From: Salisapilia sapeloensis CBS 127946
Lineage: Eukaryota; Protista; Oomycota
Direction of reading: 5' to 3'
Assembly: GCA_023334545.1 (NCBI GenBank)
Contig: JAADVB010000075.1
Location: 8,198-72,197, forward strand
Length of the DNA: 64,000 bases
In this document: one piece after another, positions 11,873-55,316 of the stretch
Position numbering within the stretch: position 1 is the first letter of the stretch
Layout of the letters: every line of letters begins with the position of its first letter
The notes under the pieces: model-generated
What the model saw: the letters and a program-made list of their open reading frames with translations, nothing else
Told to the model about the DNA's origin: nothing
Databases searched by the model: none
Translations under genes and position numbers: made by a program

Positions 11873-12140
11873 TTTAGCTTGTCAACAAAATAGCATCACA
11901 CCCTCTCCATACAAAGTATCTATCAAAGATACAGAATATAATGAGACGTATCTTAAAGAGTCGTGATAATCAGATGGATAGTGCATCAAGCCAAGTCTGT
12001 TGGTCACGACGTCAGTTCCTCGATGCTGTGCATGAAGGTCAAGCGGCAGTAGAGAAAGAATATACGTATATTAGAATCAACTTCCTTGTGTTGCTTTCTT
12101 TCTGCTACCCATGGTCTAGTCCCATATGATAGATGTCAAC

Positions 12141-36070: not shown

Positions 36071-36094
36071 TCCCACATGCGTGTCTCTATTCCT

Positions 36095-37345
36095 CTACAT
36101 GACGCGCTCCAAACATCGCAGTCGAGCGCTTCTAGACCGAGGGTTCGCCTCCATCTCCTCCTTGCTCGCTTTCATAGCCTTCCGCTTCACCAACCGATAC
36201 ACCTCCCCTCCGTCCAAGTCCTCTCCGCCACTATCATCGTCCAACTCTTCATCGCTGTCTTCCTCGTCACTGTCCTCGCTTTCCTTTCCTTCCTCATCCT
36301 ACAGAGCACAATATCAGCAAAACAATTACTTCTGCCAAGCAGCATGATAAGCATACGAGAGCTCGAAAGAGTTCCTTGATGGGCCGATCCTCGAGCGAGT
36401 GGAAAGCAATCGTACACAAGCGCCCTCCAGGTGCGAGATGATGGACGAGCGAATCGACACCGTCCTGCACGTGCTGCAGCTCTTCATTCACGTAAATCCG
36501 GAGCGCCTGGAAACACTTGGTGGCCGGATGCGTCTTGCTCTTCCGCGCCTTGATCCGCTTGGACCGGAACGCTGTGCGTTCAATGCAAGTGCGGAGGTCC
36601 GTCGTGGTTACGAATGGTCCTTTGCCACGACTCCGCTCTTGCACAATGGCTCGGGCGTACTCTTTCGCTGCCTGCTCTTCTCCAAACTCTCGAAAGATCT
36701 ACAATCCCTCGTCTTACTCGCTGCATATCACATAGGTAGAAGGTCATGTACCTTGGTAAGCTGGACTTCTGATAGCGTATTAACGGCGTCGGCTGCTGTC
36801 ATCTTGTCCGATCGCTGGTCGAATCGCATATCGAGCGGTCCATCGCGCAAAAAGCTAAACCCTCGGCTCGGTTCATCCAAGTGGAAGCTATTGGCGCCCA
36901 AGTCCACGAGGATGCCATCGACTTCCAATGGAAAGTCGTGCTGCTCAATATGGTCCGCCAGGTCCGCGTAGGAGCCGAGCGCAAAGCGCACACGGGGCGC
37001 ATACGGTTTCAGATTCTCTTGTGCAATGGCCAGTACCTATCAATACCCAGGTCACGTGACGTCTTTGCCCTAGATAAATACACGGAAAGCCACCTCTGGG
37101 TCTCGGTCGATGCAGAGCAGTTGGGCGTCCTGGTGCTTGTCTAAGAGCGCTTTGCTGTGTCCTCCAAACCCGACGGTGCCGTCGACGTAGTGCGTCCCGT
37201 GGTCTTTCGCCCAGAGCCCCACCACCTGTTCGCACAGCACAGGCACATGCACTGGCACATCGGCACTAGCGTCGGACGTGAAGCACCGTCTAGACGACTG
37301 CAAGTGGCGTAGCAAGGTAGATCGGAAGTAGGTGGGTGTTCTCAT
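36095..37345 (-). CDS. rsmH: Mitochondrial rRNA m4C methyltransferase RsmH/MraW (METTL15)
   Basis: Presequence, HVPVL, YVDGTVGFGGHS, IDRDPE, DGILVDLGANSFHLD..RGFSF..DGPLDMRFD, HPATKCFQALRIYVNEEL, FHSLEDR and NPRSRSARLR in the last exon. Confidence 0.95.
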
Positions 37346-37451
37346 GAAAGTAGAATGAAAAGAATGACTGGATGCAAGTAAAAGCCCTCGAGAGCATGGT
37401 CACGTGTGCCAAAACTGTCGCTCTAGTTGAATTCGTTAGGTGTCTTCCTAT

Positions 37452-39779
37452 CTACACACTTGGCCTCGCCATCCACGACTCATACAGCGGCTGATGAGCG
37501 CCTCGTGGATGCATCAGATGCAGCGTCTCGTGCTTCTCCACATGCATCGGCAGGCCAAGAGGTTTCCAAATGTGCGTCGAGGATCTCCGCATGCCACACA
37601 CCTGCGCCACGACCTTCTCCAGCTCCTGCTCCGTCAGGTGCGCGCCTAGCTGTACCATGGCAACGTCGTGCTTGGCGGCAGCGACGTAGCGTAAGATGCC
37701 TCTCTCGAGCAGGTACTCGACGGCCTGCTTCATGGTCTCGCTGCACAGGGCTTCTGCGTGCTGGAGCTGGTGGGAAGACAGGAGAGCCTTGGCCAGGAGC
37801 TGCGTCTGCCGAACGAGGTCGCCGACAGACATGTTGTCTATCGAGTGGGAAGCCATCGGTCGTAGGCTCTGGAGACACAGCCAGAGGGAGTCTACCAGCG
37901 GCCACGAGAGCGCCAAGATGAAGCTAACGAGTCTGCTCTTGCGCCACTTGTTCAGTCGGACGAGGACGAAGGAGTGGCTTGAGTAAGCATTCCCAAAGAC
38001 GTCTGGGCAGTGCGTCTGGAGCTGCTCTAGTCTGTCTGCCAAGTCGACGTCCTGGTGGTGACAGAGGTGGCGGAGGTAGGTCCAGAAGGAAGAGGCTTTG
38101 TGCAATAGAGAGCTGGTGGATATGCTGACCTGGTCCTGCGTGAAGATGGTGGAGACGTGGTCTGGCAGGTGTCTCTGGAGGAGGATCGAGTGGATGGCCG
38201 TGACAATCGCCATGTCGGGTAGAAAGGCATGCAGAAGCTGGTTTCGGTAGAAGTTGAGCACGAGCGCTTGCGTCGGAGAGCCCAGGTGACTCTGTACGAC
38301 GCCATTGGACTGCACTGGCACCTTGAGCACCGACAGGGCGTGGTCTACCACCTCGTCACTCGAGACGTTGCTGACGTTTACCTGTCTCTCTTCTAGTTCC
38401 TGCAGCAGCCACTGGCAGGAGGAGTGAATCATGTCTTTCGTGGCATACGCCCTCCTCCACATGAGGACAGAGGAGACGACCGAGGTGCTCGTGATGGTCC
38501 CCGTCTCTTGCATCCGGACGCCCAGCGTCTTGGCAGTCTCGAGCAAGTTGAACCTAGCGTCCAGAGCGAGAGGCTGTCCGAAGCGGACGTAGGCGTGTCC
38601 GCAGCGGAGGAAGAAGATGCTCCAGATGGACTTGAGCAGCCCTAGCAGAGTCTCCGGCGCCTTTGGCTTCCCCAGCACCTGGGCAGCATAGTCCTCCACC
38701 TCGAGCACCTTGTCGTAGTCGAGCGAAATGGGGACAAGAAGCATCTTTCGCCCTCTTGCATTCTCGTTGGACGTAGGAAGATACCTCTGCAAGAGAGACA
38801 GAAAGCCCATGCGCAGCTGATGCACTCGGCCGGAGCGAGACCGACCTCCTTCCAGAAACACCTCGATCGGATTCCCGTCCGCCATCAGCTCGTGCACGTA
38901 CGTGTCCAAGACGTCCTTGTAGAGCTGGTCGTCTCGGAAGGACCGACGCATGAAGAAGCTCCCGTTGGCTCGCAGGAAGCGCCCAACCAGAGGCAAGTCG
39001 AGGTTGTTCCCGGCCGCGATGCGAGGGAGAGGAATGCCGTAGCCAAAGCACAGGTAGCTCACGATCAGATAGTCCAGGTGTGTCTTGTGCGTAGGACAGA
39101 AGACGACGCACGTGCCGTCGTCCGCCTGCTCCAGAGCTTCCTGTAGGCCACGCAAAGAACCTGCATCGACGTGCAGGCCGTCGAACAAGAGTCGCCATGT
39201 CTTCGTCAGGATGTACCCCAGGCATCGTACAGCCGGTAGGAGCATATCCGACCGCAGAGCCTTTAGAATCTTGGAGACTCGGGCAGGCTCTCGACCGAGT
39301 CTGGCCTGCACCTGCTCCTCGTGCCGAGATGGAGACGACGGACGGTGGCCATGCAAATTGTACTCACATCCGCCACGGAGGCTAAAGACAACGTCCTGAA
39401 GCAATCGGCGGACGTCGATGCAGCTAGGACTATCCAAAGTCTGGCGCTTGGCGGCGCATCGTCTCCGAGAGCCAACGGACGCCAGAAGCCACGAGGTCTG
39501 CATGACGTCCACCATGTCTGTCGCTTTCAAATGCTCTCCACTGTGACAAGTAGCACAAGTGCCGCTGCTGCAGAGACTCATGGGCGTCGAGAGCTCCGTG
39601 TCGTCGTCGTCGTCGCCACCGGCGAGCTCTCGTCGGCCCTCGCCCATCTTCTGGTGGTCTCCTTTTCCCCACATTGCCACATCTTTGAAGTTGCCTCTCT
39701 CCACCCGATGCCATCGACCGCCACTGCGATCTTGAAAGGGAGCGTCACGCCGCGACGAGCGACCGGTCTCACCTGCCAT
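37452..39779 (-). CDS. Glycerol-3-phosphate / DHAP O-acyltransferase (GPAT/GNPAT family)
   Basis: PTHKTHLDYL (HX4D), IAAGNNL, GSFFMRRSF, FLEGGRSRSG and LVPISLDYDK. Confidence 0.92.
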   Translation of the reverse strand: MAGETGRSSRRDAPFQDRSGGRWHRVERGNFKDVAMWGKGDHQKMGEGRRELAGGDDDDDTELSTPMSLCSSGTCATCHSGEHLKATDMVDVMQTSWLLASVGSRRRCAAKRQTLDSPSCIDVRRLLQDVVFSLRGGCEYNLHGHRPSSPSRHEEQVQARLGREPARVSKILKALRSDMLLPAVRCLGYILTKTWRLLFDGLHVDAGSLRGLQEALEQADDGTCVVFCPTHKTHLDYLIVSYLCFGYGIPLPRIAAGNNLDLPLVGRFLRANGSFFMRRSFRDDQLYKDVLDTYVHELMADGNPIEVFLEGGRSRSGRVHQLRMGFLSLLQRYLPTSNENARGRKMLLVPISLDYDKVLEVEDYAAQVLGKPKAPETLLGLLKSIWSIFFLRCGHAYVRFGQPLALDARFNLLETAKTLGVRMQETGTITSTSVVSSVLMWRRAYATKDMIHSSCQWLLQELEERQVNVSNVSSDEVVDHALSVLKVPVQSNGVVQSHLGSPTQALVLNFYRNQLLHAFLPDMAIVTAIHSILLQRHLPDHVSTIFTQDQVSISTSSLLHKASSFWTYLRHLCHHQDVDLADRLEQLQTHCPDVFGNAYSSHSFVLVRLNKWRKSRLVSFILALSWPLVDSLWLCLQSLRPMASHSIDNMSVGDLVRQTQLLAKALLSSHQLQHAEALCSETMKQAVEYLLERGILRYVAAAKHDVAMVQLGAHLTEQELEKVVAQVCGMRRSSTHIWKPLGLPMHVEKHETLHLMHPRGAHQPLYESWMARPSV

Positions 39780-39928
39780 CTCCTCCGTCTCCTGTCAGAC
39801 TTTGTGTCACGCTCGACTTGGCGCTCGACAAAGCTACTTTGGCCGCCAAACGACCACTTGCTGTTGGACCTTGGACCTTTTTTCCACATCTTCCACGGTC
39901 ATTCGATATACTCCGACGGCCGATCAGC

Positions 39929-41859
39929 ATGTCGTCGATGTCGACACGGGAAGCTTCGGCCGGATACGGCTCGTGCCAGCAGGATCGGTCTCGACCATCT
40001 GGGAAGCGGATCAAGTTCCGAGACTTGCAAGAGGTAAGCCATCCCTAGTCACCCGGCATCATCCATTCCCTTCTCCTCGCGCTTCAACGATCCATCCGCT
40101 GATCCGCCTTTACCCTCCTCCTCTAGCTCTCCATACGCACGTGCGACTTGCCACAAGTCCGGTCGGACCAGCGACAGCGACATTCCGCCCCCGCAGACAC
40201 CTCCAGGATGACGCCCGTTACAGACCTTCCGGATTCGGTGCAGACGCCCAGGACGCCCATCCAGCCGAGCTCCGGCAAGAAGCGGCGGAGGCGGACCGCT
40301 GCCCAGATCGACCGCAAGTTCAAATGCCAAGTCCATGGGTGCTCGAAGGTATTCTTCTTCTACCCCCATAACTCCCTCTCTTCTCACGACACCATTGACG
40401 ACGCAGGCGTACGGGTCCGAAGGCTCTCTTAAGCAGCACGTCAAGCTCAAGCACGATGGAAAGCCAGATACGAGGACGACGCCCAAGACCCTCAAAGTCA
40501 CGCCCGTACGTTGAGACGCTCCCTCTTATCTTTCACATTCACATGACGCTCATGTGTGCATAGCAAGTGCAGACGGATGCCATGCACAACCTCTCGAGCC
40601 ACCACGCCTTCCATCTCTTCTCGGCTACACCGTCCGGCACGCGCAATGTCACCATCCGACCAGCCACGCACAGTCCAAGTCTAGGCCACGAGCCCTCGCC
40701 CCACTCGACGCCCACCACGCCTCCTGCCTTCCCACCCGCCTCCTGGCCTGGCACAGTCCACTTTGCTCTGACTAGTGTAGCAGAACCTTTGAATGGTACA
40801 ACCCTTGGCCATCGTGCTCGGTCCTACTCGATGCCATCCTCCCCGCCAAGTGTGTTTCATCATGTTCCACTGATAGTACTCGATAGTCTCATACTCTATG
40901 CTCTAGGTACCTACACGCCCACTGCGAAAAGCCATGCTGAACCACGCAGCCGAGCTGTCCGATCCAGCAAGACCAGTGCCACGCCACGGCCAAAGGGTAA
41001 GTCGTATCGTTTGAAAACACGGTCCCAGTCAGACTCCGTGTCGGATCCACATGCGTTCGACCTTCCGTCGGAGCTGTCGGAGCAACTGTGCAGTTTCAGT
41101 GACGACCCAGACCTCAGTCCCTGGGATGTCGACGCCCCTATCATGATCTCGTCTCCCTCCGATGCCGTCTCTCGAGAGCACAGCCGATCGCTCGACTGGA
41201 CAATGTCCGGAGCCAGTCTCACACCAGACGAAGAGGTCTTTGACAAGGACATTCTGTCCGTTCTGGCCACATGTGAAGCAGAAGACTCCTCTTCAGAGCG
41301 TGCTTCTACGAAAGAAGAGCCATGTGAGTCTCTTTGGGACTCATCCATCGCGTCAGACAATATTGACGTCTTCATGTCGGAAACCCTCTCGACGGGCTTG
41401 ATGGAGACGGCTCACTTGACCAGCGTCATCACGCCGACGGTGGATGTCGACATCAAGGCCCCTTGGATGGTACCCAACGAGCTCTCTTTGCCCACTCTCC
41501 CGTCTTCTTCTAACCCGTCCACCTTCCTCTTTTCCGAAGACCACTTGAAAGACGCTAGTTGGAAACATACAGCTCAAACTACATGTCCAGTGCCACTTTC
41601 AACCAGTATGAACGGACCGGACGAGGAAATGCCAGCCATTGCCGAAGACAAACCCTTCTTCACCAAGGAAGGCTTCAAGCTAGATGCAATGGCGTGGGAT
41701 CATGACAGACGCCCCTCCAGCAGCTCCACGCGTGACAGCAAGCAGATTGACTCGGCTATTAGCAATGTGCTCGACATGGATCTGAACGATGACACGGCTG
41801 GTCCATCCAGTGATACGGAGAACTCTTGCCCTTTCGCAGACATATTATTATACGATTGA
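39929..41859 (+). CDS. Single C2H2 zinc-finger transcription factor with a long disordered acidic C-terminus
   Basis: Splicing gives KKRRRRTAAQIDRKFKCQVHGCSK|AYGSEGSLKQHVKLKH (C-x4-C..H-x4-H), continuing into ORF 40567-41859. The start codon is inferred. Confidence 0.8.
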
Positions 41860-42029
41860 GAGTGCTAGCTCCATGCGCTCATGTGCAGCCACTGCATACA
41901 TGTCAACCACCACTGTGCGAATCACAAGAGAGCTTTTTATGTCTGGCAGTTGGAACCTTTATCTTTGTATCTGTCTCAATCTACTCTTGTATCAGTTACA
42001 CACCATGGCGTGATCTCTTGTGTGTCTAC

Positions 42030-45000
42030 CGTTTTACAATTAAAAAGCTGGATATATGTAATTCCGAGCAAGCATTAAAAGTTTGTTGTTGTTGCAAAGG
42101 GCTAAAAGTTTATTAAGCAAGCTTATATTAGAAGACGACGTCCTTTGGAGTCCACTGAAGGTGGCCTCTACCATTCCGAAAAATGGGATGCTGGTTGCTC
42201 AGTACATTCGGAGCCCTTGGACTGGAGAACTGCCATAAGCGCGTTTCAGAGCTGACGCTTCCGATACGGCAGTTCCTTGATTTTCGTTTTTTGGAGTCCG
42301 TTTTGAAGCGAGCAAACACTAGCACTGGCAAGAGGGCACGTATACTTTACTCACTGACGTTTATAAGTAGTGCAGACTCTATTTTGTCAATATATTCAAC
42401 TACTGGGCCTACCATAAAGTTTCATAATATTGAAGAGGAAAGTTTGTGGTATATCCGTTACGTGGTTCTTGAATCTATGTAGCAATCGCTAATATCCATC
42501 ACCTTATTAGATACATCGTAAACGACAACAACCAGTTATTAATCGAATGTTGGTTGCCCTCGAAGACGGTTGCCGTAGCTCAAGCAGACCCTGGCACAAT
42601 TAACGTAAAATTTATTATCATGGGCAACGTGTAGGAATAAAAGAGTTGAAATAAAATATGGTAAAACAGTCATTTGTTGATGGTTTGCATCACTCGCGCA
42701 TTAGACGATTATCCTTACATTAGAGGGCGGTATTCAATCTGTTTGTAGACTGCATACTTTTGCACGAGTCATAACTATGGCACTGGTGCAGCTTCTTTTA
42801 AAATCATGAAATAAACCTGTCGCGTATGATTTTAAATCTAATTCCTCTAGTCGAAACAGGGAAAGTATGTTTGGAACGCTTGGGAATGCTTAGGAGAGCA
42901 CTGAGGGGTAGAAGTTACGGTGATGTCGGATAACTCCGAGGCAGGACAAACGTGGTTGACTTCATGTTCATGTACACTGGGCCGCTGCACAGGTCGAACG
43001 TAGATAGCCAAGTGTGATCATAGATCCTATAGTACAGGGAGATATTAGCAAGTGGTCTCGCGTGCGCGTGCGTTCGACAGTGAAAATGGACGTACTTCGA
43101 GGTGGCACAGTAGTCGTCGATTTGCAACAGCGAAGCTTAGTAGAGCTGCAAGATGATGTGTTCGGGACTTATCTTGGAAAATGAGTGATGATTTATAATC
43201 ATACCGCACCCTTCTACGCAACAATTCGCATTTGGTCTCATTGTGCAAATTTATGAGGCGTACAAACTTACAGCCACAGTTTTTCATGCTATCAACGAGA
43301 CAGCATCGTTTGACCGTCTAACGAGCCCTAAAGTAATGATAGATAGAAGAAGTCAGAACAGTTTTATGACCGAAGAAGAATCACACTCAAGCGAGCTCAA
43401 GCACCTACTGCACAAAGCGTCCCGTAAATTCATTTAACTAAGCACATAAGACTGTAGTTCTTAGCTATGGATCGAAGAACCTTCTGTACAAAGTGCACGG
43501 AAGACAGAAGTACCCATCATAGAAATTTGTAGCTGTTACACGAGTTACAGAGACATCAAATGCATATATAGAAGTCAATACGGTTGCAGCTGGGCTTTAT
43601 ACCGTACTGTCATAGTATAGAACGCAACCATACCCAATCAATGGCTTGACAGTTGACTGCACTTCTCTAGCACTAAAAATAGCTTTGTAAGTAAGTTTTT
43701 TCGTATCTATTTTGTGGATAAAGTTATTTTTAAACGGTAAAATACTTTAGTCCAAAACCTTCTGTCCAAAGCAGTACAGACTTGTAACACTATTTTCATG
43801 AGGCAGTATAAACTTACTAAACCCAATTGTTAATTAACCGCAGATATTGTACATATATCAACTAAATCTCATATTAAATCACAATAAAAATAAAACTTTG
43901 TGCTAGTGTAAACAACTTTTCTATAAGAACTTCATCTTGCATGCATCATATGCATTTCCTAGTTATAAATATGTATGAGAAAATTTATTAAAACATGCAA
44001 AATTTAGACACATTACTTAAAATAAAGCAAATGATATGTTAAACAAAGTAACGTCAAATTAAAAAAAGGGAAATTGAAAAGAAGACAAATAAGTTCCAAA
44101 AACAAGTTTTGACATATACGCAAATACTTTTAAAATTTACAGCAAACAAAATTTTTAGCTCTATAAACGAATTAAACGCAAGATCTAAACAAACAGATTG
44201 TTTGTGTTTGCATTTGGTAAGATTTTAGTCTGTATAAAAAATGAATTTTTTATTGTTTTATATCTGACGTAGCGACCACATAAGCAAAGTTTTTATATTA
44301 ATTTTGTTTTACAAATGCATTGATATTTAACATGACATGAATTAAATTGTGTGTAGAGCAAATTTTTATATAAAAATCGTATAATTTTACACACAGTTAA
44401 TTTAACCAAAATTAATGCAAACTGAAGTATCAGATTGAAAACACAAAAAACAATTTGTATTAAAAACTATAAACAACTTCAAATAAAAACACAAGTTACT
44501 TTAACGTACAAAAACAAGCTAAATAAGACTTTACAATGTATAAAATTTTTGTATCAAAGCTATTGTTTCGTAAAAAATCATATATTTTAACTTTAGAAAA
44601 AATACAAATACAACGTTGTAGGTATTTTGTTAAAGGTGAATAAAAATTACTCTAAATACGATAACAAATAGACTATACATAACATAATTATTAAGGCACT
44701 TAACAACATAACAAAAGTTAATAAAAACTAGAAATTACATGAAGACAGTATGTTTTGAATCAAACATTGTATTTTTGTATTCAAAGCCCTCTATCTATCA
44801 CTAAGCAATTTTACAATTACTTTTTAATACAATGTAAAGAATAGATCCAACTACTGTTTTAATTAAACAAAATTTGTGACTTTGCATGATGCTTATAACT
44901 ATTTATATATCGTATCATCTATTCATCATACATAAACAGTTGTAGAAAGTGCTTTTCTGAATAACCTTTAACATTTAGTGTTTCTTAAAAACCTTTGTGA

Positions 45001-48000
45001 TATATTGTATATAAACATTACAACAAATTTATTTATATTAAATATTATCCTTAGCCTAAATTCATTAAAAACTTTAATAAAAATTGTAGAGCTTACGTAA
45101 TAAATTTGGAAATTATTCATTGTATCCAAAAATTATTTTTTACATATATTGTAGCGTACAGCAAACATCTCATGTTCAAATTTTTTCTCTTAAATTCCTC
45201 TATGAATGCGCTTTATAAATATGCAGAACACTATGGACGACAACAACGTATAATGAATGTGTCAAAAAGTTTACATTAATAGCAGAAAACCGTCTGTAAA
45301 GAGTATATTTTTAAATCATAAAAAGACAGTAAAAAATACTTGTAGGCTTGTCCACCGCTACATGTGTATTATATTGTTATGAAAAAAAAATTATCATGCT
45401 ATTATCATATTTGATTATATAGTCAAGCACTACAATGTTTTATATATTTAATTAAATTTATCATGATATCGATTCCTGAAAGCATAAAACAAAAAAGGCA
45501 AATTTGGAGGAAACTACTTTAAACTTAAATAATACTTAATCTTTTTAACTTTAGTTTTATGACTTAAAAATTATGTTTATGTATAAAAGAAAAGTTTGTA
45601 TACATTGTTGTAATATTTTATATGTGAGCAATAAAAGATCGATTTTTTTATTATATCTGACATTGAATGTAGAAAAGATTTTCTCTTTATCTATACATTT
45701 AATGTTATATACCTTTTTTACATTTTTATTATTTTAAAAGATACATAATAAATAAGTTCGTTCGTTTAATTTCTATAATTATTAAATGATATTATTTAGC
45801 AGCATACAGACACTAACCTGTTTAATTTTAAAATTTATAAGTTTATATTTGAGATTTCTTACTAATAGTGATATTGAGATTTGTACTTTGAGTACTAGTT
45901 TTCAATATGTTTTGGTTAAATATTGTTCTTAACGTAAGTGTTATGCTCCTTATAGCATTAATTTAATTATCTAGTCAGTTTATAGTATTTAAAACATAAA
46001 AAACTTGTGAGAATATATAATATATATTCAATGGTAGTTTATATACTTGTTTTAGCACAAAAGTTTTATTTTCAAATGATAAGTACATGCTATTTTTTTG
46101 TTAATAGTTTGAAGCTGTGTGTTTAAATGTTATCTCCATATAAGGAAGAAACCTTATCAATCTCAATATTAAGTTTTTTATTTTTTTTATAGTACAAAAT
46201 GTGTATTAAACTTATATTTTTTCACGTAAAATAATAAATCTGCTAAAAAAAAATTGCATACAAAGAAGCGTTCTTTGTTGTCGTTATTTTCTAGCTGATC
46301 TATATGTGCTAAGTGTTATAATATCACATGTTTGTCATAGCCTAATATGAAATGTTTTTTTTGGTCTAGCTTTTTTTAACTTTGTATAAGAATATCTATT
46401 TATGAAAATTTTCTAAAAACTTTACAACGCAGTTTATACGATTTCGACATTTTTATTTAAGCAAACAAAGAATACTTTGTAGAAAAACACGTTGATTGCT
46501 TATATTTATTACTGTTGAAAGAAAATACAACATTTTATAAATATAGATAGTCTATTTGACTAAATAATTACAGTTGACATTTTAGGCGTTGAGAAAACGC
46601 ACTAAAATTTTGTAAATTTGTAGCTGTCGAAAAATTTTGCTCCGTATCAATTTGTAAAGGATACACAAGCAGCGTTAGGTTTAATTTAGGTTCGTCCAAA
46701 CAGAGGTCTGGATATTTGACAAGCTTAAGCTCAATTGAATACAGTGTATTTTTACTCATATCTTTACATTCGTTGTTGTAAAATATGTTCTCTTATATTC
46801 ATGCAGTATCTATCTTTTTAATGCTTATTGTGCAACTAAGTGTGTTCATTTCGTAGCACAAGACGACCAAATCGACGTAGGAACACGTCGAAGGAACTAC
46901 ACTCTTACACAATTTGCTGTTTAAATCATGTTATTACAATCTGCAATTGATGTGTTGACAGTATTTTTGATTACCAAGGCGCTGGCGAAATCAAATTCAA
47001 TGCACGAGTACATCATTCTAGAGTACGTTTGTGTTCATTATAAACTCTGTCAATAATGAGGCGACATTTCGCTAGTATTAAGGCAGCAGATATCTGTTAT
47101 GCATGCAAGCGACACTAAGACAGTATCATCTAGAGCAATGTACGTTCTGTTCAAATGTCTTGATTCAAATGCTTTTTATAGTCAACGTGTCTGACAATGG
47201 TCTTGACTGTAAACAATACAATTGGCTTGTGGTCATGAGTAGATAGTTTGATTTAGCGAATGCTGTCGTCTTCTGTAATTCAAAACAGTGTCAGAATGCG
47301 GTGATTACTCGCTCGGATTCGTATCTGCAACGGCAAACAACATTGCCAGATGAAGCATATCCGTCACCTACATTCTGATAGTCTGACAGTAATCCTATCT
47401 CTTACATCGATGTACCACAAAGAGTATCCTTTAATATTCGTGAACACTAATATTAATGTAGTCTTAATGCTGTATTTCACAGCGTGCAGAGATTTGAAGA
47501 GTCGATGTATATTTAGCGTTGATACCAAACCTGCTAAAGCACTCTACTTCAGCTGCAATCGCTAGAGTTGATAGACGCCAAAAACTGTATTTATATGCTG
47601 GATAAAACTTGCTTTAGAAATTGTTCATACAACAGTCGTTGATGTCGTGTGCTTACATTTGAACCACCGTGATCGTTCGCTAATTACTTTGACAGGTACT
47701 GCAACCTTTTCTAGGCTTACTAATTAATCAGCAAGGTTAAGCAGCTCTTCAATTGCCGCTACGCGCGATATTGAGCTTAAATAGGTTAGTAAGCTCACAA
47801 ATTCAATTCTGTTATATACTTCATCATGTTGAATCCCGGAGGTCTCTATCCTACAACATCATCTAGGACGAGTACTCCTACCAGCTTAGTGCGTGCTCTC
47901 TATTTTGTACTTGCACTGAGATCGTGTTGGCGAAAGTTTATATAAGCAGTTTTCGAGCATCATCTTTTTGCTGCATTTGTCTATACGTGGTACAATTCAG

Positions 48001-48700
48001 GAAAAATCTACCTATACACACCTAGCAATATGTTTGACATTGAATAATGTGCTCAATCGTAGTGTGCCATCAACACAATGCTTGCAAACGCATAGCGATC
48101 CGGCGTTTTTAAAGGTAGGTCTTTTACCTTTGCTTGATAGCATGCGGATTTTGCTTTCACATATTATGGAGCTTTAGTTTGGCTTCTCGATTCGGCGAGC
48201 TGGTTTTCCTTTAGTTGTGCGATTGCTTTTGCATTCGATTGTGCCAAGTTGCAGGAAGAAAGGTATTATTAAAGGTATAAGTTATAATGAGAGTAAATGC
48301 CATGCGACTATAATAGAATTGCGTGCCTGTTGACAGTGGTTGGTCGTCAAAGTCGTAGAACCAAGGACTACATGCTGCACCCAACCGACGTATGAATTAA
48401 AAGCACTAGGCAGCTCTTGGTACGATAGCAAGCATAGACAAGGTAACTTTTGTGGGTATAGTACACCATGTCACCACCATTACACAGAAATAGGCGCAAA
48501 AGTCACTTGGATGAACGCTGCGGTTAAGCATAAAGCAAGACAGCACAAAGATTACATGTACCGTCACTCGAGTCTGGTAATCTAGCTCTCACCTTTACAT
48601 ACAATGCTCTACTTCAGACTTTCCGAATCAGATGCATCAAATTCAAGCAGCCATTTATACCAATCAAAACGCTTGAAAAGGCTCTTATAATCTTGCAGTC
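42030..48700. other. Gene-free AT-rich island with a ~23% GC core (43600-46800) and intermediate-GC shoulders; candidate centromere or replication origin
   Basis: Only short ORFs (none over 100 aa) in ~6.7 kb of an otherwise packed genome. Hand counts: 66 G+C of 300 at 44401-44700 and 69 of 300 at 45841-46140. Strand skew inverts mid-island. The functional label is inference. Confidence 0.85.
48660..48670 (+). promoter_or_regulatory. CCAAT-box-like motif upstream of EEP gene 1
   Basis: CCAATCAAAAC, identical to the 11-mer at 23214-23224, ~130 bp upstream of ATG 48797. Confidence 0.45.
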
Positions 48701-48796
48701 TCTAATAAATACGTCAATTAAGGCAAACGACCCTACATTCCATAGAAACACTGCTATTCCTACGAAGAAGATTGCGCCTAAAACAAGCGTTTTAAC

Positions 48797-49879
48797 ATGA
48801 CCGAGATCGGATCGTTCCTGCCGACGACCTCATCCTCCGCCCCTCGCAACCCGTACGCCCGTCATACGAAGAGCGCAGGCCAAACTCCGTCGTCCAAGGT
48901 CGTGCTGGGTGTTATCGCAGCCTTCACAGTCGGATGTGTCGTTTTGTGGAGAACCTCTTCGATGCCATCGATGACGTCGATGACCACGGACTCCAAGGTC
49001 GCTGTGCCTCGGTTCAAAGGAGCTTCGGCAGTCGATCCGCACCAACTAGGTATCATGACCTTCAACCTCCGTTTTGCAGGTGCAAATGACGGACATAATG
49101 GATGGAGATACCGAAAGGATCACGTGGCAAATATCATCAATCGGTACCATCCGGCCATCATGGGGACGCAGGAGGGACTGAAGGATCAGCTAGCAGACCT
49201 CCACGACCTCCTCTCTCACCCATATGAGCGGTACGGTATCGAGCGAGAGACGAACGGAGAGTTCGAACAGATCTTCTACGACACAAGTGTCGTCGAGTGG
49301 CTCGACGGAGGGAACTTTTGGCTCTCGGACTCACCCGACACTCCAGGCACTAAAGGATGGGATGCAGCCTGCGTTAGATTGGTAACCTGGTGCAAGTTCC
49401 GACTGCATGCGACCGGCCAGGAGCTCTTCTTTTTCAACACGCAGCTGGATCACGAAGGCGCTAGGGCGAGAACCATGGGCTCCCAGCTGCTCCACGAGCG
49501 CATGCAGGAGATCGCTGGCGCCGACTCGGCTGTCTTCCTCGTCGGTGACTTTAACACGTACCGTCACACGAGTACCTACAGCTACTTGACGGCAGCCAAG
49601 GAAGGTCCGAAGCTGTTGGAGGCGTGGCCTGAAGCAGAGAACCAGATCGGAGACGTGTCGTACACATATCATGGGTGGGCCGGCATACAGAATGACGGGG
49701 AGAAGACTGCGAAACGCGCTGCGAACCACATCGACTGGATCTTGTATCGTCCCAAGATGAGAGTTCTGTCAACGGAAGTGATCACGGAGTCTCGGAATAG
49801 TCGGTATCCGTCGGACCACTATCCAATCCATGCTGAGGTCATGTTTCCACCGGTTACACAAGTAGCTCCGTCGTCGTAG
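48797..49879 (+). CDS. Endonuclease/exonuclease/phosphatase (EEP) family hydrolase with an N-terminal TM anchor, copy 1
   Basis: IMTFNLRF, MGTQEG, GGNFWLSDSPD, GWDAACVRLVTW, GDFN, IDWILY and YPSDHYP. Intronless. Confidence 0.92.
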   Translation: MTEIGSFLPTTSSSAPRNPYARHTKSAGQTPSSKVVLGVIAAFTVGCVVLWRTSSMPSMTSMTTDSKVAVPRFKGASAVDPHQLGIMTFNLRFAGANDGHNGWRYRKDHVANIINRYHPAIMGTQEGLKDQLADLHDLLSHPYERYGIERETNGEFEQIFYDTSVVEWLDGGNFWLSDSPDTPGTKGWDAACVRLVTWCKFRLHATGQELFFFNTQLDHEGARARTMGSQLLHERMQEIAGADSAVFLVGDFNTYRHTSTYSYLTAAKEGPKLLEAWPEAENQIGDVSYTYHGWAGIQNDGEKTAKRAANHIDWILYRPKMRVLSTEVITESRNSRYPSDHYPIHAEVMFPPVTQVAPSS

Positions 49880-49925
49880 AAAAAAAAAACTTTTTTTTCC
49901 ATTTTAAATTTTTTTTCGATTCGAT

Positions 49926-50741
49926 ATGAGCTCCCTGCGGATCATGACGTTTAACCTGCGCTTTGACACGCCACAGGATGGACGGAACCAGTGGGGGCAT
50001 CGACGAGAGCACGTGACAGAGGTCATCGAGCGGTATCATCCGCTCTGCTTCGGGACACAGGAGGGACTAGTCAACCAGCTGGAAGATTTGACACGGTCTC
50101 TCCAGCATCCGTACGAGCGATTCGGAGCGCCTCGGGAGCCCAACTCGGAGCATCAGCAGATCTTCTTTGACACAGACTTTCTGGAAAAGATCGATGGGGA
50201 CACCTTCTGGCTGTCGGACACGCCAGAGAAAGCCGGCACCAAAGGCTGGGATGCGAAGCATGTACGAGTCGCGACGTGGTGCCACCTCCGTCTGATCGCC
50301 ACTGGACACGAGTTCTTCCTCTGCAACACCCAGCTCGATCATATCGGACAAGTCGCTCGATTGGAAGGAGCCAAGCTCATTGCGTCCAAGATGAACGCGA
50401 TAGCAGGAGGGAAGACGCTCTTTATCATCGGAGACTTTAACACGTACCGAGACTCGGACGTCTATCGCTTCTTAACGAAAGACACTACCGGTCCAAAGCT
50501 GTTTGATGCATGGACAGAGACTGATGAGCAGATTGGCGACGTCTCGTGCAGCTTCCACGGATGGGAAGGTGTCGATGGACCGCATGAAAAGGGTGAAAAC
50601 AAGGGCGAGCGCCACATTGACTGGATCCTCTTCCGGCCGAAGATGCAGGTGCTGTCGACGGAAGTTATTACAGAGCATAGAGACGGTCGCTATCCGTCGG
50701 ACCACTATCCGATCCAAGCGGAAATCGATCTGGACGAGTAA
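49926..50741 (+). CDS. EEP family hydrolase, soluble, copy 2
   Basis: LRIMTFNLRF, FGTQEG, GDTFWLSDTP, GWDAKHVRVATW, GDFN, IDWILF and YPSDHYP. Intronless. Confidence 0.92.
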   Translation: MSSLRIMTFNLRFDTPQDGRNQWGHRREHVTEVIERYHPLCFGTQEGLVNQLEDLTRSLQHPYERFGAPREPNSEHQQIFFDTDFLEKIDGDTFWLSDTPEKAGTKGWDAKHVRVATWCHLRLIATGHEFFLCNTQLDHIGQVARLEGAKLIASKMNAIAGGKTLFIIGDFNTYRDSDVYRFLTKDTTGPKLFDAWTETDEQIGDVSCSFHGWEGVDGPHEKGENKGERHIDWILFRPKMQVLSTEVITEHRDGRYPSDHYPIQAEIDLDE

Positions 50742-50775
50742 TGTCAATAACAATCAAAGTCACCTTCCTTTCTAT

Positions 50776-52091
50776 TTAGTTTGCATAACACGACCGAGGG
50801 TACCCGTCGCCATGACGCAGCGTCACACTGTCCAGCGCGACGGTCTCGTGGCCTTTGGTAAAGTCACCAAGGATGCGAATGGACGAGAGGTCCGACAGGA
50901 CGTCGACAAATTCACACTGCGTCGGCTTGGTCCACTCCCGAATGACATTCTGAGGGTCTTTTAGCCATCCAGCATGCTCCTGTAGTGGTAGTCGGAACTG
51001 CTTAGTCGATCCGTCAAACGTGTAGTCCAGAGACATCGGTAGTCCAAGCGTGATGCCGAGGTTGTGATTGCACGATGCGCATTCGAGCAGCACTAGGTTC
51101 ATTCGTCCGTACTTGTTCAGGTTGGCCATATCAAAGTTTCCTTCTGCAGACGACAGGACAAAGTCTAACGACCCACCGTATGCAGCCCACTGGTGTCCGA
51201 GGAACTTGCTCGGAGCTGCAAAGTACCACATCATACTGTCATCCCCCGTGTCGACCTGATGGTGAATGAGATCATCCATGGCGTAGATATAGTAGCTCAA
51301 GAGCCCTCCTGCTCGAGACAGAGGCTGATAAGTTGGCACAGAGTTACCATTTCCTACGACTACCCAGTCTTCAATGTTCACATCGAACGGACTGGAGACC
51401 AAGGAGCTTGTCGTTGTGAGTACAATCATGCCTTCATTCGACACATCGCTCTTGGAGTTAGTTGCTGTATACCGGAACTCTGCATACTGCTCTATGTCAG
51501 AAAGCTGATACTATGAGGATATAGCGAAGCTTGGTACTTTGGTGTGAAGCGGATGCGTATCGTACTGCGGTCTCTTGAATATTACTCGACTCTTACTTCC
51601 TGTCACGACCGTCGGAACAGTGGTAATTGGAACTTGCTCTCGCTTCGGTTCATACCTGCGCAGTCCTCATGAGCAATAATACTAGTGCGACAATCTGGGT
51701 GAAAATGTACCCGTGGATACTGTAGACTTGCGAGAGCTGGTATAGCTGTCCATTCTCAGGTAGCGATGTGATTGTGATGAGCAGCTACAGTATCCTCCAA
51801 ATCGTTAGGTATGCATTACACTTTACCATGCACGTGATTAGCTACCTTGTCACCTGTTTTGTCGTAAGCTTTCAGCATAACTTCTGTCTCGTGCCCAGGT
51901 GCTGCATGATAGACGAGATTGCGGGCGACGGGGCTATTTAATCAGGCAGATAAGCTTTTACATGGACTAATGGACATCTGAAAGAATTTTACTCACGTGT
52001 CTGCCATTGCCAATGGCATGAAGACAATGGACAGTAGGAGTACTATCCAAAGCGTTCGCATCCGACTTTTTGTTCGCCACCGTGGTGCCAT
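50776..52091 (-). CDS. Secreted laminin IV type A (laminin-B) domain protein, multi-exon
   Basis: Signal peptide MAPRWRTKSRMRTLWIVLLLSIVFMPLAMA. WYFAAPSKFLGHQWAAYGGSLDFVL and FVDVLSDLSSIRILG match the laminin-B pattern. Confidence 0.75.
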
Positions 52092-52238
52092 TTGACTCTT
52101 CAGGTAGATGCTGACGCTTTAGCTCGAGACGAGACACCTTCGTTTCCAGTCATGAAACGGGCGTTGAATTCTGGAACGACCTGATGACGAATTATAAATG
52201 CAAGTGCTTACGTCTAATAGGAAGAAGGTTTATTATCT

Positions 52239-54675
52239 CTACTCTGCTCCTACTTCTCCAGCGTATTGGCGTAGTTCGGTCAAAACACCAAGAGCATCGT
52301 TATCAACTGGGTTCTTGTCATTCATTGCGTGGATGCGACCTAGAAGGGTTTCCAGAAGTCGTTCTTGAAAATGTCCATTCACATGCTGGTTGTCTTCTGG
52401 TTTCTCTTGCTGTGTTGTCTCCAAAAACACCTTAAGACCGTCCATCACCTTTGACTCTAGCAGCACTTCATCGCTGATACGCTGCAAGATATAAATGAGA
52501 GCTGTCTCTGTTGGCAGATGACTCGACTGCGTGTTTTGATCGGCTATATCATAAAGATCCGAGAGCCAAAGCTTACCTTGCTTGTCCAGCAGCTCCTGCG
52601 TACTGCCTACATCCGGCAAAAGGTCTGCGAGTACCTCGAGTACCATCTCGCCACTGCACAATACAAGCATTAGACTATTTTAGTCTAAAAGAAAGCAGCT
52701 AGGAAACGTACTTGGTAGACGTAGTGTCCAAGCTAGACTCGGCATAGATGACCGCTAGGCGGAACATGGTCTCGTACAGCTTGTCCATGGCTGGTAGTCG
52801 CCCGTTCTCCCGATAGTATGCCGCGACAACCTCTACACCTCGCCGCTGCATAATCTGAGCGACTTGCAGTAGCATTGCACTAGCCTCCGCTTGTACGGTC
52901 ATGTCCGAGAACCGTTGTACGTGGGGACTAGCAACCGCATCAACTAGGCCCTTGACATGTGGCAAGAGAACTCGATCGAGAGAGCCTCGCATCAAATGCA
53001 TCATCAGTTGCAGCGTACTGCACGTAGCAGTCGGCGTTATCGTAGCCACTGCGTCGTCCTCACCCCGAATACGGGGCAAGAGGATCTTCAAGTATGTGTC
53101 TGGACTCGTGAATCTTCCCACAAGTTCAGCAGCTTCCTCAATGTCCTTCTGAAGCTCCTTGTCTCCCCACACACGCCGTAAGGATGCGACAATAATGTGT
53201 GCATCGACTGTCAGCGTTTCTTCGCAGTAGACGAGGATGGTCTTGAGAAGTCGAGCGGCTCGGACTCGTGTCTGGGACTGCCAATTGGTCAGTTCTCTCA
53301 GCACAGGCTGGAGGAAGCGCCTTGCACGTCCTCTGACGAACAATCTCGTTCCGAGCGACGGGCGCTCGTGGAACGGAGCTGGCAACTGCCCATTGTAATT
53401 GTAGGATGGGTTACGCCCATCAATACCATACTGCTTCATCTCTATGACCTCACTCGCATGCTCCTGCTCATACGTGTTTCCAAGCATTTCTAGCGTCTTC
53501 ATAGCTTGGATAGCAATGTATAGGATCTCGTCGCTCACACCACTGAGTAGATAAGGCAAGAGGCGAGACTCGTGGTCGTATCTGTCCGGCAGCGTCGTGA
53601 TCCAATCGCCGACCATGGCATAGAACGCCTTTCGGACACTACTGTTTGCGTCCTGGTCTAGTCTGGCAAAGTAGTTGACTCGAGTCTCGCCAACGTAAAA
53701 GGCAGCAATCGGGATGACGTTCTCCTCTCGATGTCCGATGAGCTCCACCAAGGTTTCCGTTCCACTGCCTTTGCATTTCTCGACATTGGGACAGCTGAGG
53801 ACCGTCCGAATGCCATTGATAGCGGCCACACGGACTCTGGCGACACGGTGCAGCAAGAGGTGCTTCATGGCTCGGACGATCGCGACGCTAAAGTGCTTCA
53901 TGACCGAGACCATGTGATCACTAATCAAAGCGAGCAAGTGGCAGCTGCGTATATTGACCTCATGATATGGGTCGTGAAGCCCATTGACTAGTACGAGTAT
54001 CATATCGAAGATGTAGGCATGTAGGATGGAGGAGGCGCTATGCGTAAATACATTTTGCAGGATCGTCTCGATCAACTGAAGGAAGAGGAGTCTAATTTCC
54101 TCCGACGGTTCAGTCGGCTTTCGTCGATCCACTTGTTTTTCATCGACGTAGATTCTTCCTCTCTGGAAAGCTTCCTGCAAATACGCATCTCTTGTGAACT
54201 CTTGCATGTTTCCATCGAACGCATACGGACTCTCGATCCGCGAGACGATGGACGGCATCAAGTAAGGTAGGTAGCGCATGATGTCTTGTTCGTTTTGGAA
54301 CGACAAGATGCACAAACGGATACTCACGTCTCTGACTTTTTCAATCGAGTCGTGGAAGCGTTTGAATAGTAACTTGGCGACGACATCGAAGTCGAAGTGT
54401 TGATCCGAGGTTTCCACCAGGATATGCCGCTCGAGAGCGACTGCCGCTTTCTTGCGTACGTTTGGACGATCGTGTGCCATGCGATTGACTTCCAGGTGGA
54501 AGTTGCATGCCGTGGACGACGTACCCACCACACACTCCGTCCCATCTGATGTCGGTTGAGTGTAAGTCGTGTCGGACATGGATTTCCGGAGAACGGCGTC
54601 AGCCTTGGCCGCTCGCGGCTGGGTGTCCGCATCCTGTAGCTCTTGCCATAGCTGGTTGATCCTGTCGTTGGCCAT
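52239..54675 (-). CDS. DNAAF5: Dynein axonemal assembly factor 5 (HEATR2), HEAT repeats
   Basis: EPSEEIRL, DPYHEV, WITTLPDRYDHESRLLPYLLSGVSDE, RPSLGTRLFVR and ELTNWQSQTRVRAARLL. The last exon is 52239-52670. Confidence 0.88.
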
Positions 54676-55280
54676 CGAGACCTTATGCTGAGAGTCGTCT
54701 ACGCCTGTTCATGTCTGTTGAAACCGTGGAGGCGTCGAATCTATTTCCGGCGTGGTATCTTAGGACGGTCAGACCTTTTGAACGAAAGGAACAAATCTCG
54801 ATCACAATTCGATCAGTCTGTATTTTCATTCGCACCAGCCACCTGTGCCAGCTAGTATCTGCCACTACCACCACTATCATCTATCATGACATCCACGACG
54901 GAAGACGCTCGGTATAGAAATTTCATTCTTTCCACCCTGTCACTAGCTTACTGAAACGTCTCTAGGCCGTGCACGCCTCGCAAGCGTCTGGAAGAAGCGA
55001 AGGAAGTCGACGGCCAATTATCCGCTTCGAGTGTCCTGCGAGATTTCTGCGCCCACTTCGTGTCGGGCGTTCTGGACCAAGGCCTACATAAATTCCAGTA
55101 GCAAATCAAAATAAAATCCAACTTTCCACATGCGCTGGTAATGGCTTCTTCCGTCCTAGTTTGCCAAAGCCGGTTACAAACTCTTCAACAGGTGGCTTTG
55201 CAACGCACGCATTTCGTCAACTGGACGACGGACTTTGCCCCCGTTTTGACACGCCCTCTATCGCTTTCGAGCGCTCTGAA

Positions 55281-55297
55281 CTCCATTCGCCATTCTT
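55281..55297 (+). promoter_or_regulatory. Oomycete INR+FPR-like core promoter upstream of myosin
   Basis: CTCCATTCGCCATTCTT resembles the YCAYTYY initiator plus flanking element. It lies ~20-35 bp before ATG 55317. Confidence 0.4.
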
Positions 55298-55316
55298 CTT
55301 ATTAAGCACCTACGTC

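What the first reader, a model, noticed from the sequence alone, without database searches (positions are those of the whole stretch)
43600..46800. Candidate short, AT-rich regional centromere in an oomycete-like genome
Seen: a ~3.2 kb core at ~22-23% GC (hand counts of two 300-nt samples) inside a ~6.7 kb gene-free gap, in a genome whose genes look ~50-60% GC and are usually 25-150 bp apart. GC grades down from both sides through ~1.5-2 kb shoulders. I found no tandem satellite, terminal repeats or intact transposon ORF. Established: short GC-poor troughs mark centromeres in the diatom Phaeodactylum, in Plasmodium and in several yeasts, whereas Phytophthora sojae centromeres are very large and transposon-rich. 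Inference: this may be a compact, repeat-free centromere type that I do not know of in oomycetes.
Basis: partly seen in the sequence, partly recalled or inferred. Interest (0 to 1): 0.85.

Follow-up and report, generated by a model that had tools for sequence, protein, structure and literature searches.

The report
Short AT-rich candidate centromere, compact oomycete
A unique, silent, repeat-free 3-kb stretch of very AT-rich DNA in a gene-packed oomycete genome looks like the small centromeres of diatoms and some yeasts, unlike the huge transposon-filled centromeres known from other oomycetes. No kinetochore data exist yet to prove it.

Summary
A 3.0-kb core (43,666-46,705) has 24% GC. It lies in a 6.9-kb ORF-free gap (41,860-48,796) of a window whose remaining sequence has 53% GC. 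All 60 of the window's 100-bp windows at or below 32% GC fall inside the core.

- **Not an artefact:** the core is single-copy. One independently built 36.9-kb short-read contig spans 41,500-47,499 (core plus most of both shoulders) without a difference.
- **No content:** I found no repeats, RNA families, tRNAs, coding periodicity, Pfam domains, or phage or plasmid matches.
- **Silent:** assembled RNA from three runs stops about 190 nt after the left gene. No RNA run was listed as holding 5% of the gap's words.
- **Strand bias flips:** A/T bias reverses near 45.25-45.5 kb in the orientation expected of a fixed replication origin, as at Candida centromeres.
- **Synteny breakpoint:** two gene blocks conserved in Pythium and Phytophthora/Peronospora meet here. 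In those relatives they lie on different contigs.
- **Host:** a long-branch peronosporomycete oomycete.

Best reading (about 0.55): a short AT-rich regional centromere, a kind known in diatoms, Plasmodium, a red alga and Malassezia, but new for oomycetes.

The scan noted roughly ten similar islands on other pieces of this genome. I could not check those notes. CENP-A occupancy and one-per-chromosome are untested.

The parts
43666..46705 (.). AT-rich core (GC 0.24), the proposed CENP-A/kinetochore-binding core
   Evidence: Contiguous 200-nt windows have GC <0.30. Segmentation gives 43,700-46,799 at GC 0.24. It holds 60 of 60 low-GC 100-nt windows of the whole window. The longest ORF is 57 aa. 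There is no period-3 signal, A/T tracts of 5 or more number 52 against 30 +/- 5 expected, no Pfam hit, no Rfam hit or tRNA, and no phage or plasmid match.
41860..43665 (.). Left shoulder: non-coding DNA at GC 0.42; apart from the left gene's ~190-nt 3' UTR at its start, absent from RNA contigs
   Evidence: no period-3 signal; no domains; no relic of the neighbours found in relatives. RNA contigs end at 42,036-42,059.
46706..48796 (.). Right shoulder: non-coding DNA at GC 0.39-0.40
   Evidence: No RNA run holds 5% or more of the words of 42,100-48,740.
45250..45535 (.). Turning point of strand composition (A and C excess to the left, G and T excess to the right): inferred long-term replication initiation zone
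   Evidence: The cumulative G-C minimum lies at 45,247, and the A-T and (A+C)-(G+T) maxima at 45,532-45,535. The detrended A-T excursion is 117 against 59 +/- 13, and the (A+C)-(G+T) excursion 156 against 68 +/- 15; 0 of 2,000 shuffles reached either. G-C alone was reached by 154 of 2,000 shuffles.
40567..41859 (+). Left flanking gene: expressed 430-aa orphan ORF whose transcript ends about 190 nt into the gap
   Evidence: ORF. No Pfam family and no informative Atlas hit. RNA contigs of three runs cover it and stop at 42,036-42,059.
34226..39794 (.). Left conserved synteny block: Ank-DHHC, MraW-type methyltransferase, GPAT
   Evidence: The same order and orientation occur in Peronospora effusa and Pythium oligandrum.
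48797..59420 (.). Right conserved synteny block: two tandem EEP hydrolases, Laminin_B protein, DNAAF5, myosin-Ank-FYVE
   Evidence: EEP-EEP-LamininB-DNAAF5 is conserved in Pythium oligandrum. DNAAF5 next to myosin-Ank-FYVE is conserved in Phytophthora ramorum.

Best explanation
The roughly 3-kb core, probably together with part of its roughly 2-kb shoulders, is a short, sequence-unique, AT-rich regional centromere.

**Proposed working (inferred, not shown).** CENP-A nucleosomes and the kinetochore assemble on the AT-rich, untranscribed core. The same site fires as a constitutive, probably early, replication origin, and over long time this has written the mirror-image strand bias. Suppressed recombination, and so an absence of GC-biased gene conversion, together with AT-biased mutation keeps the core at 24% GC in a 53% GC genome.

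**Shown.** Composition, uniqueness, silence in assembled RNA, assembly contiguity, the skew flip and the synteny breakpoint.

**Inferred.** CENP-A binding, origin activity and one site per chromosome.
For: 1. The trough is about 10 sd below the rest of the window and is the only one in 64 kb. On the published diatom criterion (at least ten 100-bp windows <=32% GC within 3 kb; bioRxiv 10.1101/096016) it scores 54.
2. Its size matches experimentally mapped short centromeres: 2.4-5.6 kb CENP-A peaks in Phaeodactylum and 3-5 kb kinetochore-bound regions over an AT-rich core in Malassezia (PMC7025860).
3. It is unique in sequence, with no satellite, transposon ORF, domain or RNA gene.
4. The ORF-free gap is 3-6 times longer than any other in the window.
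5. Transcript contigs from three RNA runs end at 42,036-42,059 and none covers 42.06-47.5 kb. No RNA run was listed as holding 5% of 42,100-48,740, although the same runs hold 21% of 41,000-49,500, which is about the size of the two gene flanks.
6. A/T bias flips, and more weakly G/C bias, with G and T in excess on the strand running away from the centre. Koren et al. found the same pattern once per chromosome at Candida and Yarrowia centromeres (PMC2924309).
7. The gap joins two ancestral gene blocks that lie on different contigs or chromosomes in Pythium oligandrum, Phytophthora sojae and P. ramorum. Centromeres are known synteny breakpoints in oomycetes (PMC11139960) and Malassezia.
8. Unchecked scan notes list roughly 10-13 other 2-3.6-kb AT islands, several with skew flips, on other pieces of this roughly 24-Mb genome. 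That count is in the range of oomycete chromosome numbers: 12 for P. sojae, 18 for P. plurivora, and at least 16 centromeres named in G. ultimum.
Against: - There are no CENP-A, kinetochore, Hi-C or replication data.
- I could not read the rest of the assembly, so one-per-chromosome rests on unchecked notes. Some of the noted islands are smaller or carry tRNA genes and may be a different thing.
- All oomycete centromeres mapped or inferred so far (Phytophthora sojae, Peronospora, Pythium, Globisporangium) are long, rich in Copia-like transposons and of genome-average GC (PMC7082073; PMC11139960). The prior within this group therefore points the other way.
- Synteny blocks here are only 3-5 genes long, so a breakpoint at the gap is weak evidence.
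- The G-C skew change alone is not significant (154 of 2,000 shuffles).
- RNA evidence comes from assembled contigs, which show presence better than absence.
Confidence: 0.55

Rival explanations
1. Inert AT-rich spacer. The core is the fully decayed remnant of an old insertion, such as a transposon, viral or mitochondrial DNA, or other foreign AT-rich DNA, or simply neutral DNA driven AT-rich by mutation bias. It has no segregation function.
For: There is no positive functional evidence for anything. The core lacks any detectable feature. Depletion of CC/GG (0.62) and GA/TC (0.75) fits context-dependent cytosine loss, which a follow-up agent also reported for an AT island on another piece (s1-288927). 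The gap lies at a rearrangement junction, where insertions could accumulate.
Against: - A genome this compact, with spacers of about 35-65 bp between neighbouring ORFs, should delete 6.9 kb of useless DNA.
- There is no relic of coding periodicity, domains, rRNA or tRNA, as a mitochondrial or viral piece would leave.
- There is no repeat copy, and no RIP signature: CA/TG is over-represented at 1.19 and TA is at 0.90.
- A passive remnant does not predict a centred, significant skew flip.
- It also does not predict recurrence of islands of the same size on other pieces (unchecked).
Confidence: 0.25
2. A fixed, efficient replication origin (an AT island bound by ORC) that is not a centromere.
For: The A/T skew, and more weakly the G/C skew, flips in the origin orientation at the centre. 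A/T homopolymer tracts are enriched, 52 against 30 +/- 5. To my knowledge, AT islands mark origins in fission yeast.
Against: - A genome of about 24 Mb needs hundreds of origins. This 64-kb window has exactly one such island and no weaker ones (0 of 1,210 low-GC windows elsewhere).
- The scan notes list only about a dozen genome-wide (unchecked).
- In Candida, strong skew flips were seen at centromeres and not at ordinary origins (PMC2924309).
- Origin function alone does not explain a 6.9-kb gene-free, silent zone.
Confidence: 0.12
3. Assembly artefact or contaminant joined into the contig.
For: AT-rich DNA of about 22% GC resembles oomycete mitochondrial composition (my knowledge). The only DNA run that holds the stretch may be the one the assembly was made from.
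Against: - A separately built Logan contig of 36.9 kb spans 41,500-47,499 with 0 differences and 0 gaps, continuous with nuclear genes.
- The window has no N.
- Graded shoulders lie on both sides.
- There is no phage or plasmid match and no rRNA or tRNA.
Confidence: 0.03

Closest known systems
Phaeodactylum tricornutum (diatom) centromeres (Diner et al.; bioRxiv 10.1101/096016)
   Same: Both hosts are stramenopiles. Both sites are short (CENP-A peaks 2.4-5.6 kb in the diatom), unique in sequence, and low in GC within a genome of about 50% GC. Neither has a satellite. The diatom low-GC-window criterion is met here many times over.
   Different: The trough here is much deeper and longer: 3 kb at 24% GC, obvious even in 1-kb windows. 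The diatom dips were not evident in windows of 0.5 kb or more. Here there is also a 6.9-kb gene-free zone and a skew flip. CENP-A binding and episome maintenance were shown in the diatom and are untested here.
Malassezia and Candida lusitaniae type short regional centromeres in GC troughs (PMC7025860; PMC2924309)
   Same: Both have an AT-rich core inside a kinetochore region of a few kb at the chromosomal GC minimum, with no repeats. Both sit at synteny breakpoints between species. The Candida-clade yeasts and Yarrowia share the origin-type skew flip centred on the centromere.
   Different: These are fungi, so the resemblance is analogy, not homology. The Malassezia core is under 1 kb and carries a 12-bp motif. 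I could not look for a motif with only one locus available.
Phytophthora sojae, Peronospora, Pythium and Globisporangium centromeres (PMC7082073; PMC11139960)
   Same: Both belong to Peronosporomycete oomycetes, are poorly transcribed, and are associated with karyotype and synteny breakpoints.
   Different: Those centromeres span roughly 115 kb to over 270 kb of CENP-A chromatin, are repetitive, are enriched in a Copia-like transposon and have genome-average GC. This site is about 3-7 kb, non-repetitive, transposon-free and 24% GC.
Plasmodium falciparum and Cyanidioschyzon merolae centromeres
   Same: They are 2-4 kb, AT-rich and occur once per chromosome, as summarised.
   Different: Plasmodium centromeres sit in an already very AT-rich genome (my knowledge). 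Neither is documented, as far as I know, to have the three-tier profile or the skew flip seen here.

Membership tests
Short AT-rich regional centromere (diatom / Plasmodium / C. merolae / Malassezia kind) | Occupied by CENP-A (CenH3) and kinetochore proteins | not testable with these tools
   No ChIP or CUT&Tag data were available for this organism.
Short AT-rich regional centromere (diatom / Plasmodium / C. merolae / Malassezia kind) | Exactly one per chromosome | tested here: inconclusive
   There is exactly one in this 64-kb window. The rest of the assembly could not be read. Unchecked scan notes list about 10-13 similar islands in 444 windows and 332 pieces.
Short AT-rich regional centromere (diatom / Plasmodium / C. 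merolae / Malassezia kind) | Local GC minimum of a few kb (diatom rule: at least ten 100-bp windows <=32% GC within 3 kb) | tested here: met
   There are 54 such windows in the 3-kb window starting at 44,001, and 0 of 1,210 outside 43.5-46.9 kb. The core is 3,040 nt at GC 0.239.
Short AT-rich regional centromere (diatom / Plasmodium / C. merolae / Malassezia kind) | Unique sequence without satellite arrays or transposons | tested here: met
   only short chance-level repeats; no domains. A single short-read contig spans the region, which implies single copy.
Short AT-rich regional centromere (diatom / Plasmodium / C. merolae / Malassezia kind) | Gene-free and poorly transcribed core | tested here: met
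   There is no ORF of 120 aa or more over 6.9 kb. RNA contigs of three runs stop at 42,036-42,059. No RNA run was listed for 42,100-48,740. Caveat: assembled contigs do not prove absence.
Short AT-rich regional centromere (diatom / Plasmodium / C. merolae / Malassezia kind) | Confers mitotic stability on an episome | not testable with these tools
   This needs a transformation experiment.
Centromere-linked constitutive origin (Candida / Yarrowia skew pattern) | GC and AT skews of opposite sign that both reverse at the centre | tested here: met
   On the left, AT skew is +0.10 and GC skew -0.13. On the right, AT skew is -0.06 and GC skew +0.10. The A-T and combined excursions exceed all 2,000 shuffles. 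G-C alone is weak, reached by 154 of 2,000.
Oomycete long transposon-rich centromere (P. sojae kind) | CENP-A region of over 100 kb, clustered Copia-like transposons, GC like the genome average | tested here: not met
   The gap is only 6.9 kb between expressed genes. It has no reverse-transcriptase, integrase or other domain. GC is 0.24 against 0.53. Family definition.
Nuclear copy of mitochondrial DNA | Recognisable mitochondrial genes, rRNA or tRNA | tested here: not met
   There is no Rfam hit at E<=1, no tRNA, no period-3 signal and no Pfam family reaching significance in 20 ORF pieces. No mitochondrial genome database was available for a direct BLAST.
RIP-type mutated repeat | Repeat copies with CpA/TpG depletion and TpA excess | tested here: not met
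   The odds ratio of CA/TG is 1.19 and of TA 0.90. There are no repeat copies.

The most novel reading that the evidence does not exclude
This peronosporomycete oomycete has replaced, or never acquired, the long Copia-rich centromeres of its relatives. Instead it uses diatom-like centromeres defined mainly by low GC content and coupled to a fixed replication origin. If composition alone suffices, as in Phaeodactylum, a 1-3-kb piece of this core could maintain the first autonomous episome in an oomycete. Short AT-rich centromeres might then be the ancestral stramenopile state.
Probability: 0.2. Interest if true: 0.8.

Novelty: new member of a known kind. Interest (0 to 1): 0.6.

Why it matters
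All oomycete centromeres described so far are long transposon-rich regions of genome-average GC. This has been contrasted with the short AT-rich centromeres of diatoms and Plasmodium.

A validated 3-kb AT-rich centromere in an oomycete would show that centromere type can switch within the Peronosporomycetes, perhaps along with genome compaction. It would also give a clean system of unique sequence, with every centromere assembled, for studying CENP-A placement and the link between centromere and origin. Finally, it would offer candidate DNA for stable episomes, a tool that to my knowledge is not available for oomycetes.

Tried and rejected
**Checks on the core and gap that found nothing**
- Tandem and dispersed repeat searches found only short matches at chance level.
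- Rfam at E<=1 and ARAGORN found nothing.
- Pfam on the 20 longest ORF pieces of the gap gave no significant family.
- A search for relics of the genes that neighbour the two synteny blocks in Pythium, Peronospora and Phytophthora (NIPA, DRC10 and others) gave only noise. The first-stage idea of fossil coding sequence in the shoulders is therefore unsupported, and there is no period-3 signal either.
- blastn of the core against phage and plasmid collections gave no match.
- The classic RIP indices fall inside the thresholds I recall for RIP (my knowledge), but the dinucleotide odds ratios show no CpA loss or TpA gain, so I rejected RIP.

**Attempts to reach more of the genome or name the organism**
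- An exact-protein look-up of a window gene in public assemblies found nothing on record. I could not reach the rest of the genome or name the species.
- Literature searches did not identify the organism, nor any report of short AT-rich oomycete centromeres.
- An Atlas search of the 430-aa flanking ORF was uninformative.
- The published PNAS version of the diatom paper is not held, so I used its preprint.
Full report
**Observation**

The window averages 51% GC, or 53% outside the gap. In 1-kb bins only 44-47 kb falls below 0.30, at 0.24, 0.22 and 0.28. The next-lowest bin outside the gap and its shoulders is 0.42, at 25-26 kb. At 300-nt resolution GC is 0.18-0.25 from about 43,750 to 46,600.

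The run of 200-nt windows below 0.30 GC spans 43,666-46,705, which is 3,040 nt at GC 0.239. Three-kb windows elsewhere have mean 0.533 and sd 0.029, so the trough lies about 10 sd below them.

Least-squares segmentation gives three tiers:

| Tier | Coordinates | GC |
|---|---|---|
| Flanking genes | outside 41,900-48,799 | 0.54-0.57 |
| Left shoulder | 41,900-43,699 | 0.42 |
| Core | 43,700-46,799 | 0.24 |
| Right shoulder | 46,800-48,799 | 0.40 |

The shoulders sit at the low end of the 0.40-0.50 seen in the window's other ORF-free intervals. The profile is therefore stepped rather than a smooth V.

No stop-to-stop ORF of 120 aa or more exists between 41,857 and 48,781. The next-largest such interval in the window is 2.3 kb. 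There are no Ns.

**What is not there**

- Tandem Repeats Finder and the repeat finder return only short matches at chance level.
- There is no Rfam family at E<=1 and no tRNA.
- The longest ORF in the core is 57 aa.
- The 20 longest ORF pieces of the gap have no Pfam family reaching significance.
- Period-3 signal is at background in the core and both shoulders (2.8-3.3), against 10-45 in the flanking genes.
- The core matches nothing in the phage or plasmid collections.
- Dinucleotide odds ratios show no RIP pattern: CA/TG is 1.19 and TA is 0.90. They do show depletion of CC/GG (0.62) and GA/TC (0.75) and an excess of GC (1.54).
- A/T tracts of 5 nt or more are enriched, 52 against 30 +/- 5.

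**Real, single-copy and silent**

A Logan contig of 36,940 nt from DNA run X1 spans 41,500-47,499 with no difference and no gap. X1 may be the data the assembly came from, so this is an independent assembler rather than independent data. It still rules out a scaffolding junction and argues for single copy.

Transcript contigs of three RNA runs from a different study cover the left gene and end at 42,036, 42,059 and 42,036, about 190 nt past its stop codon. Nothing from these runs lies on 42.06-47.5 kb.

Those runs hold 21% of the sampled words of 41,000-49,500, which is about the size of the two gene flanks. No RNA run is listed as holding even 5% of 42,100-48,740. Contigs show presence better than absence, so low-level transcription is not excluded.

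**Strand composition**

The left half of the core has A>T and C>G. The right half has T>A and G>C.

| Measure | Turning point | Observed excursion | Shuffles | Shuffles reaching it |
|---|---|---|---|---|
| A-T | 45,532 | 117 | 59 +/- 13 | 0 of 2,000 |
| (A+C)-(G+T) | 45,535 | 156 | 68 +/- 15 | 0 of 2,000 |
| G-C | 45,247 | 44 | 33 +/- 7 | 154 of 2,000 |

Turning points come and excursions. The G-C change alone is not significant.

The orientation, with G and T in excess on the strand running away from the centre, is what a long-lived bidirectional origin produces. Koren et al. found exactly this pattern once per chromosome at the centromeres of Candida albicans, C. dubliniensis, C. lusitaniae, Lodderomyces and Yarrowia. 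GC and AT skews there had opposite signs and switched at the same point (PMC2924309).

**Host and neighbourhood**

GPAT (37,452-39,779, minus strand) and DNAAF5 (52,699-54,675, minus strand) hit Pythium, Globisporangium and Phytophthora best, at 44-54% identity. Albugo follows at 42-46% and Saprolegniales at 35-45%. A DNAAF5 tree puts the window inside the Peronosporomycetes on a long branch, apart from Albugo. The DNA run's contigs total about 24 Mb, so this is a very compact oomycete genome.

The left block, Ank-DHHC then MraW-type methyltransferase then GPAT, keeps the order and orientation found in Peronospora effusa and Pythium oligandrum. The right block, EEP, EEP, Laminin_B and DNAAF5, keeps that of Py. 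oligandrum. DNAAF5 next to myosin-Ank-FYVE keeps that of Phytophthora ramorum.

In Py. oligandrum, P. sojae and P. ramorum the two blocks lie on different contigs or chromosomes. In Pythium the genes next to GPAT and to the EEP pair are only about 0.6-0.9 kb away. The trough, together with an expressed 430-aa orphan ORF, therefore sits at a synteny breakpoint. Blocks are short here, so this is modest support.

**Interpretation**

Each testable sequence property matches the short AT-rich regional centromeres that have been mapped experimentally:

- Phaeodactylum has CENP-A peaks of 2.4-5.6 kb, typically one per chromosome, marked by at least ten 100-bp windows <=32% GC in 3 kb. This locus scores 54.
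- Malassezia has 3-5 kb bound regions over an AT-rich core at chromosomal GC minima, which are also synteny breakpoints.
- Plasmodium and Cyanidioschyzon have 2-4 kb centromeres.

The locus does not match the oomycete centromeres known so far. In P. sojae these are CENP-A regions of roughly 115 kb to over 270 kb, repetitive, enriched in a Copia-like transposon and of genome-average GC (PMC7082073). The same transposon criterion has been used in Pythium, Globisporangium and Peronospora (PMC11139960).

I therefore read the locus as a short AT-rich regional centromere with an embedded constitutive origin, at a probability of about 0.55. The remainder goes to the following rivals:

- **Inert decayed AT-rich spacer (0.25).** This is hard to square with a genome that otherwise tolerates spacers of only about 35-65 bp between neighbouring ORFs, and with the centred skew flip.
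- **Origin that is not a centromere (0.12).** Such islands are too few. There is one in this 64-kb window and none weaker.
- **Artefact (0.03).**

**Other DNA of the same genome**

First-stage notes of this scan describe similar 2-3.6-kb AT-rich, gene-free islands on roughly 10-13 other pieces, and several of those notes report skew flips. Twelve notes in 444 windows carry the word 'centromere'.

One follow-up on another piece (s1-288927) reported the same CC/GG and TC/GA shortage that I measured here. That number of islands in about 24 Mb would fit one per chromosome, given 12 chromosomes in P. sojae and 18 in P. plurivora. These notes are unchecked AI readings and I could not read those pieces, so I count this as a lead and not as evidence.

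**Limits**

I had no CENP-A, Hi-C or replication data, no access to the rest of the assembly, no mitochondrial database for a direct comparison, and RNA evidence from contigs only. The species could not be named.

Noticed in passing
window 40567-41859 (+): An expressed 430-aa ORF has no Pfam family and no informative Atlas neighbour. It occupies the place where Pythium and Peronospora have a NIPA-type Mg transporter upstream of GPAT, so it is an orphan gene right at the synteny break beside the trough.
   Followed up: partly
window 48797-50741 (+): Two tandem endonuclease/exonuclease/phosphatase-family genes are separated by 46 bp. The tandem pair, and its neighbours Laminin_B and DNAAF5, are conserved in Pythium oligandrum (L004), so the duplication is old.
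   Followed up: partly
window 43666-46705: The core shows an unusual dinucleotide pattern: CC/GG 0.62 and GA/TC 0.75 are depleted, GC is at 1.54 and AC/GT and CA/TG are at 1.19. This is not RIP-like. A follow-up on another AT island of this genome reported the same CC/GG and TC/GA shortage.
   Followed up: partly
window 41500-42059 and beyond (RNA runs X2, X4): The RNA contigs that end at the left edge of the gap are 7.3 and 8.6 kb long (2.0 kb in run X3), so those two must run across several neighbouring genes. This suggests overlapping or read-through transcripts in this very compact genome.
   Followed up: no
window 11153-13529 and 24998-26362: These are the next-largest ORF-poor interval (2.3 kb, GC about 0.48-0.49) and the second-lowest GC stretch (about 0.40-0.42, partly overlapping a 184-aa ORF on the minus strand). 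Neither has a single 100-bp window at or below 32% GC, and I did not examine them further.
   Followed up: no
window 52699-54675 (-) and 55161-59420 (+): A DNAAF5 dynein-assembly factor is present, so the organism probably makes flagellated zoospores. No Peronospora effusa homologue appeared among the DNAAF5 hits. Next to it lies a 1,419-aa myosin-ankyrin-FYVE fusion that is annotated as three separate genes in the Phytophthora ramorum record (L005).
   Followed up: no
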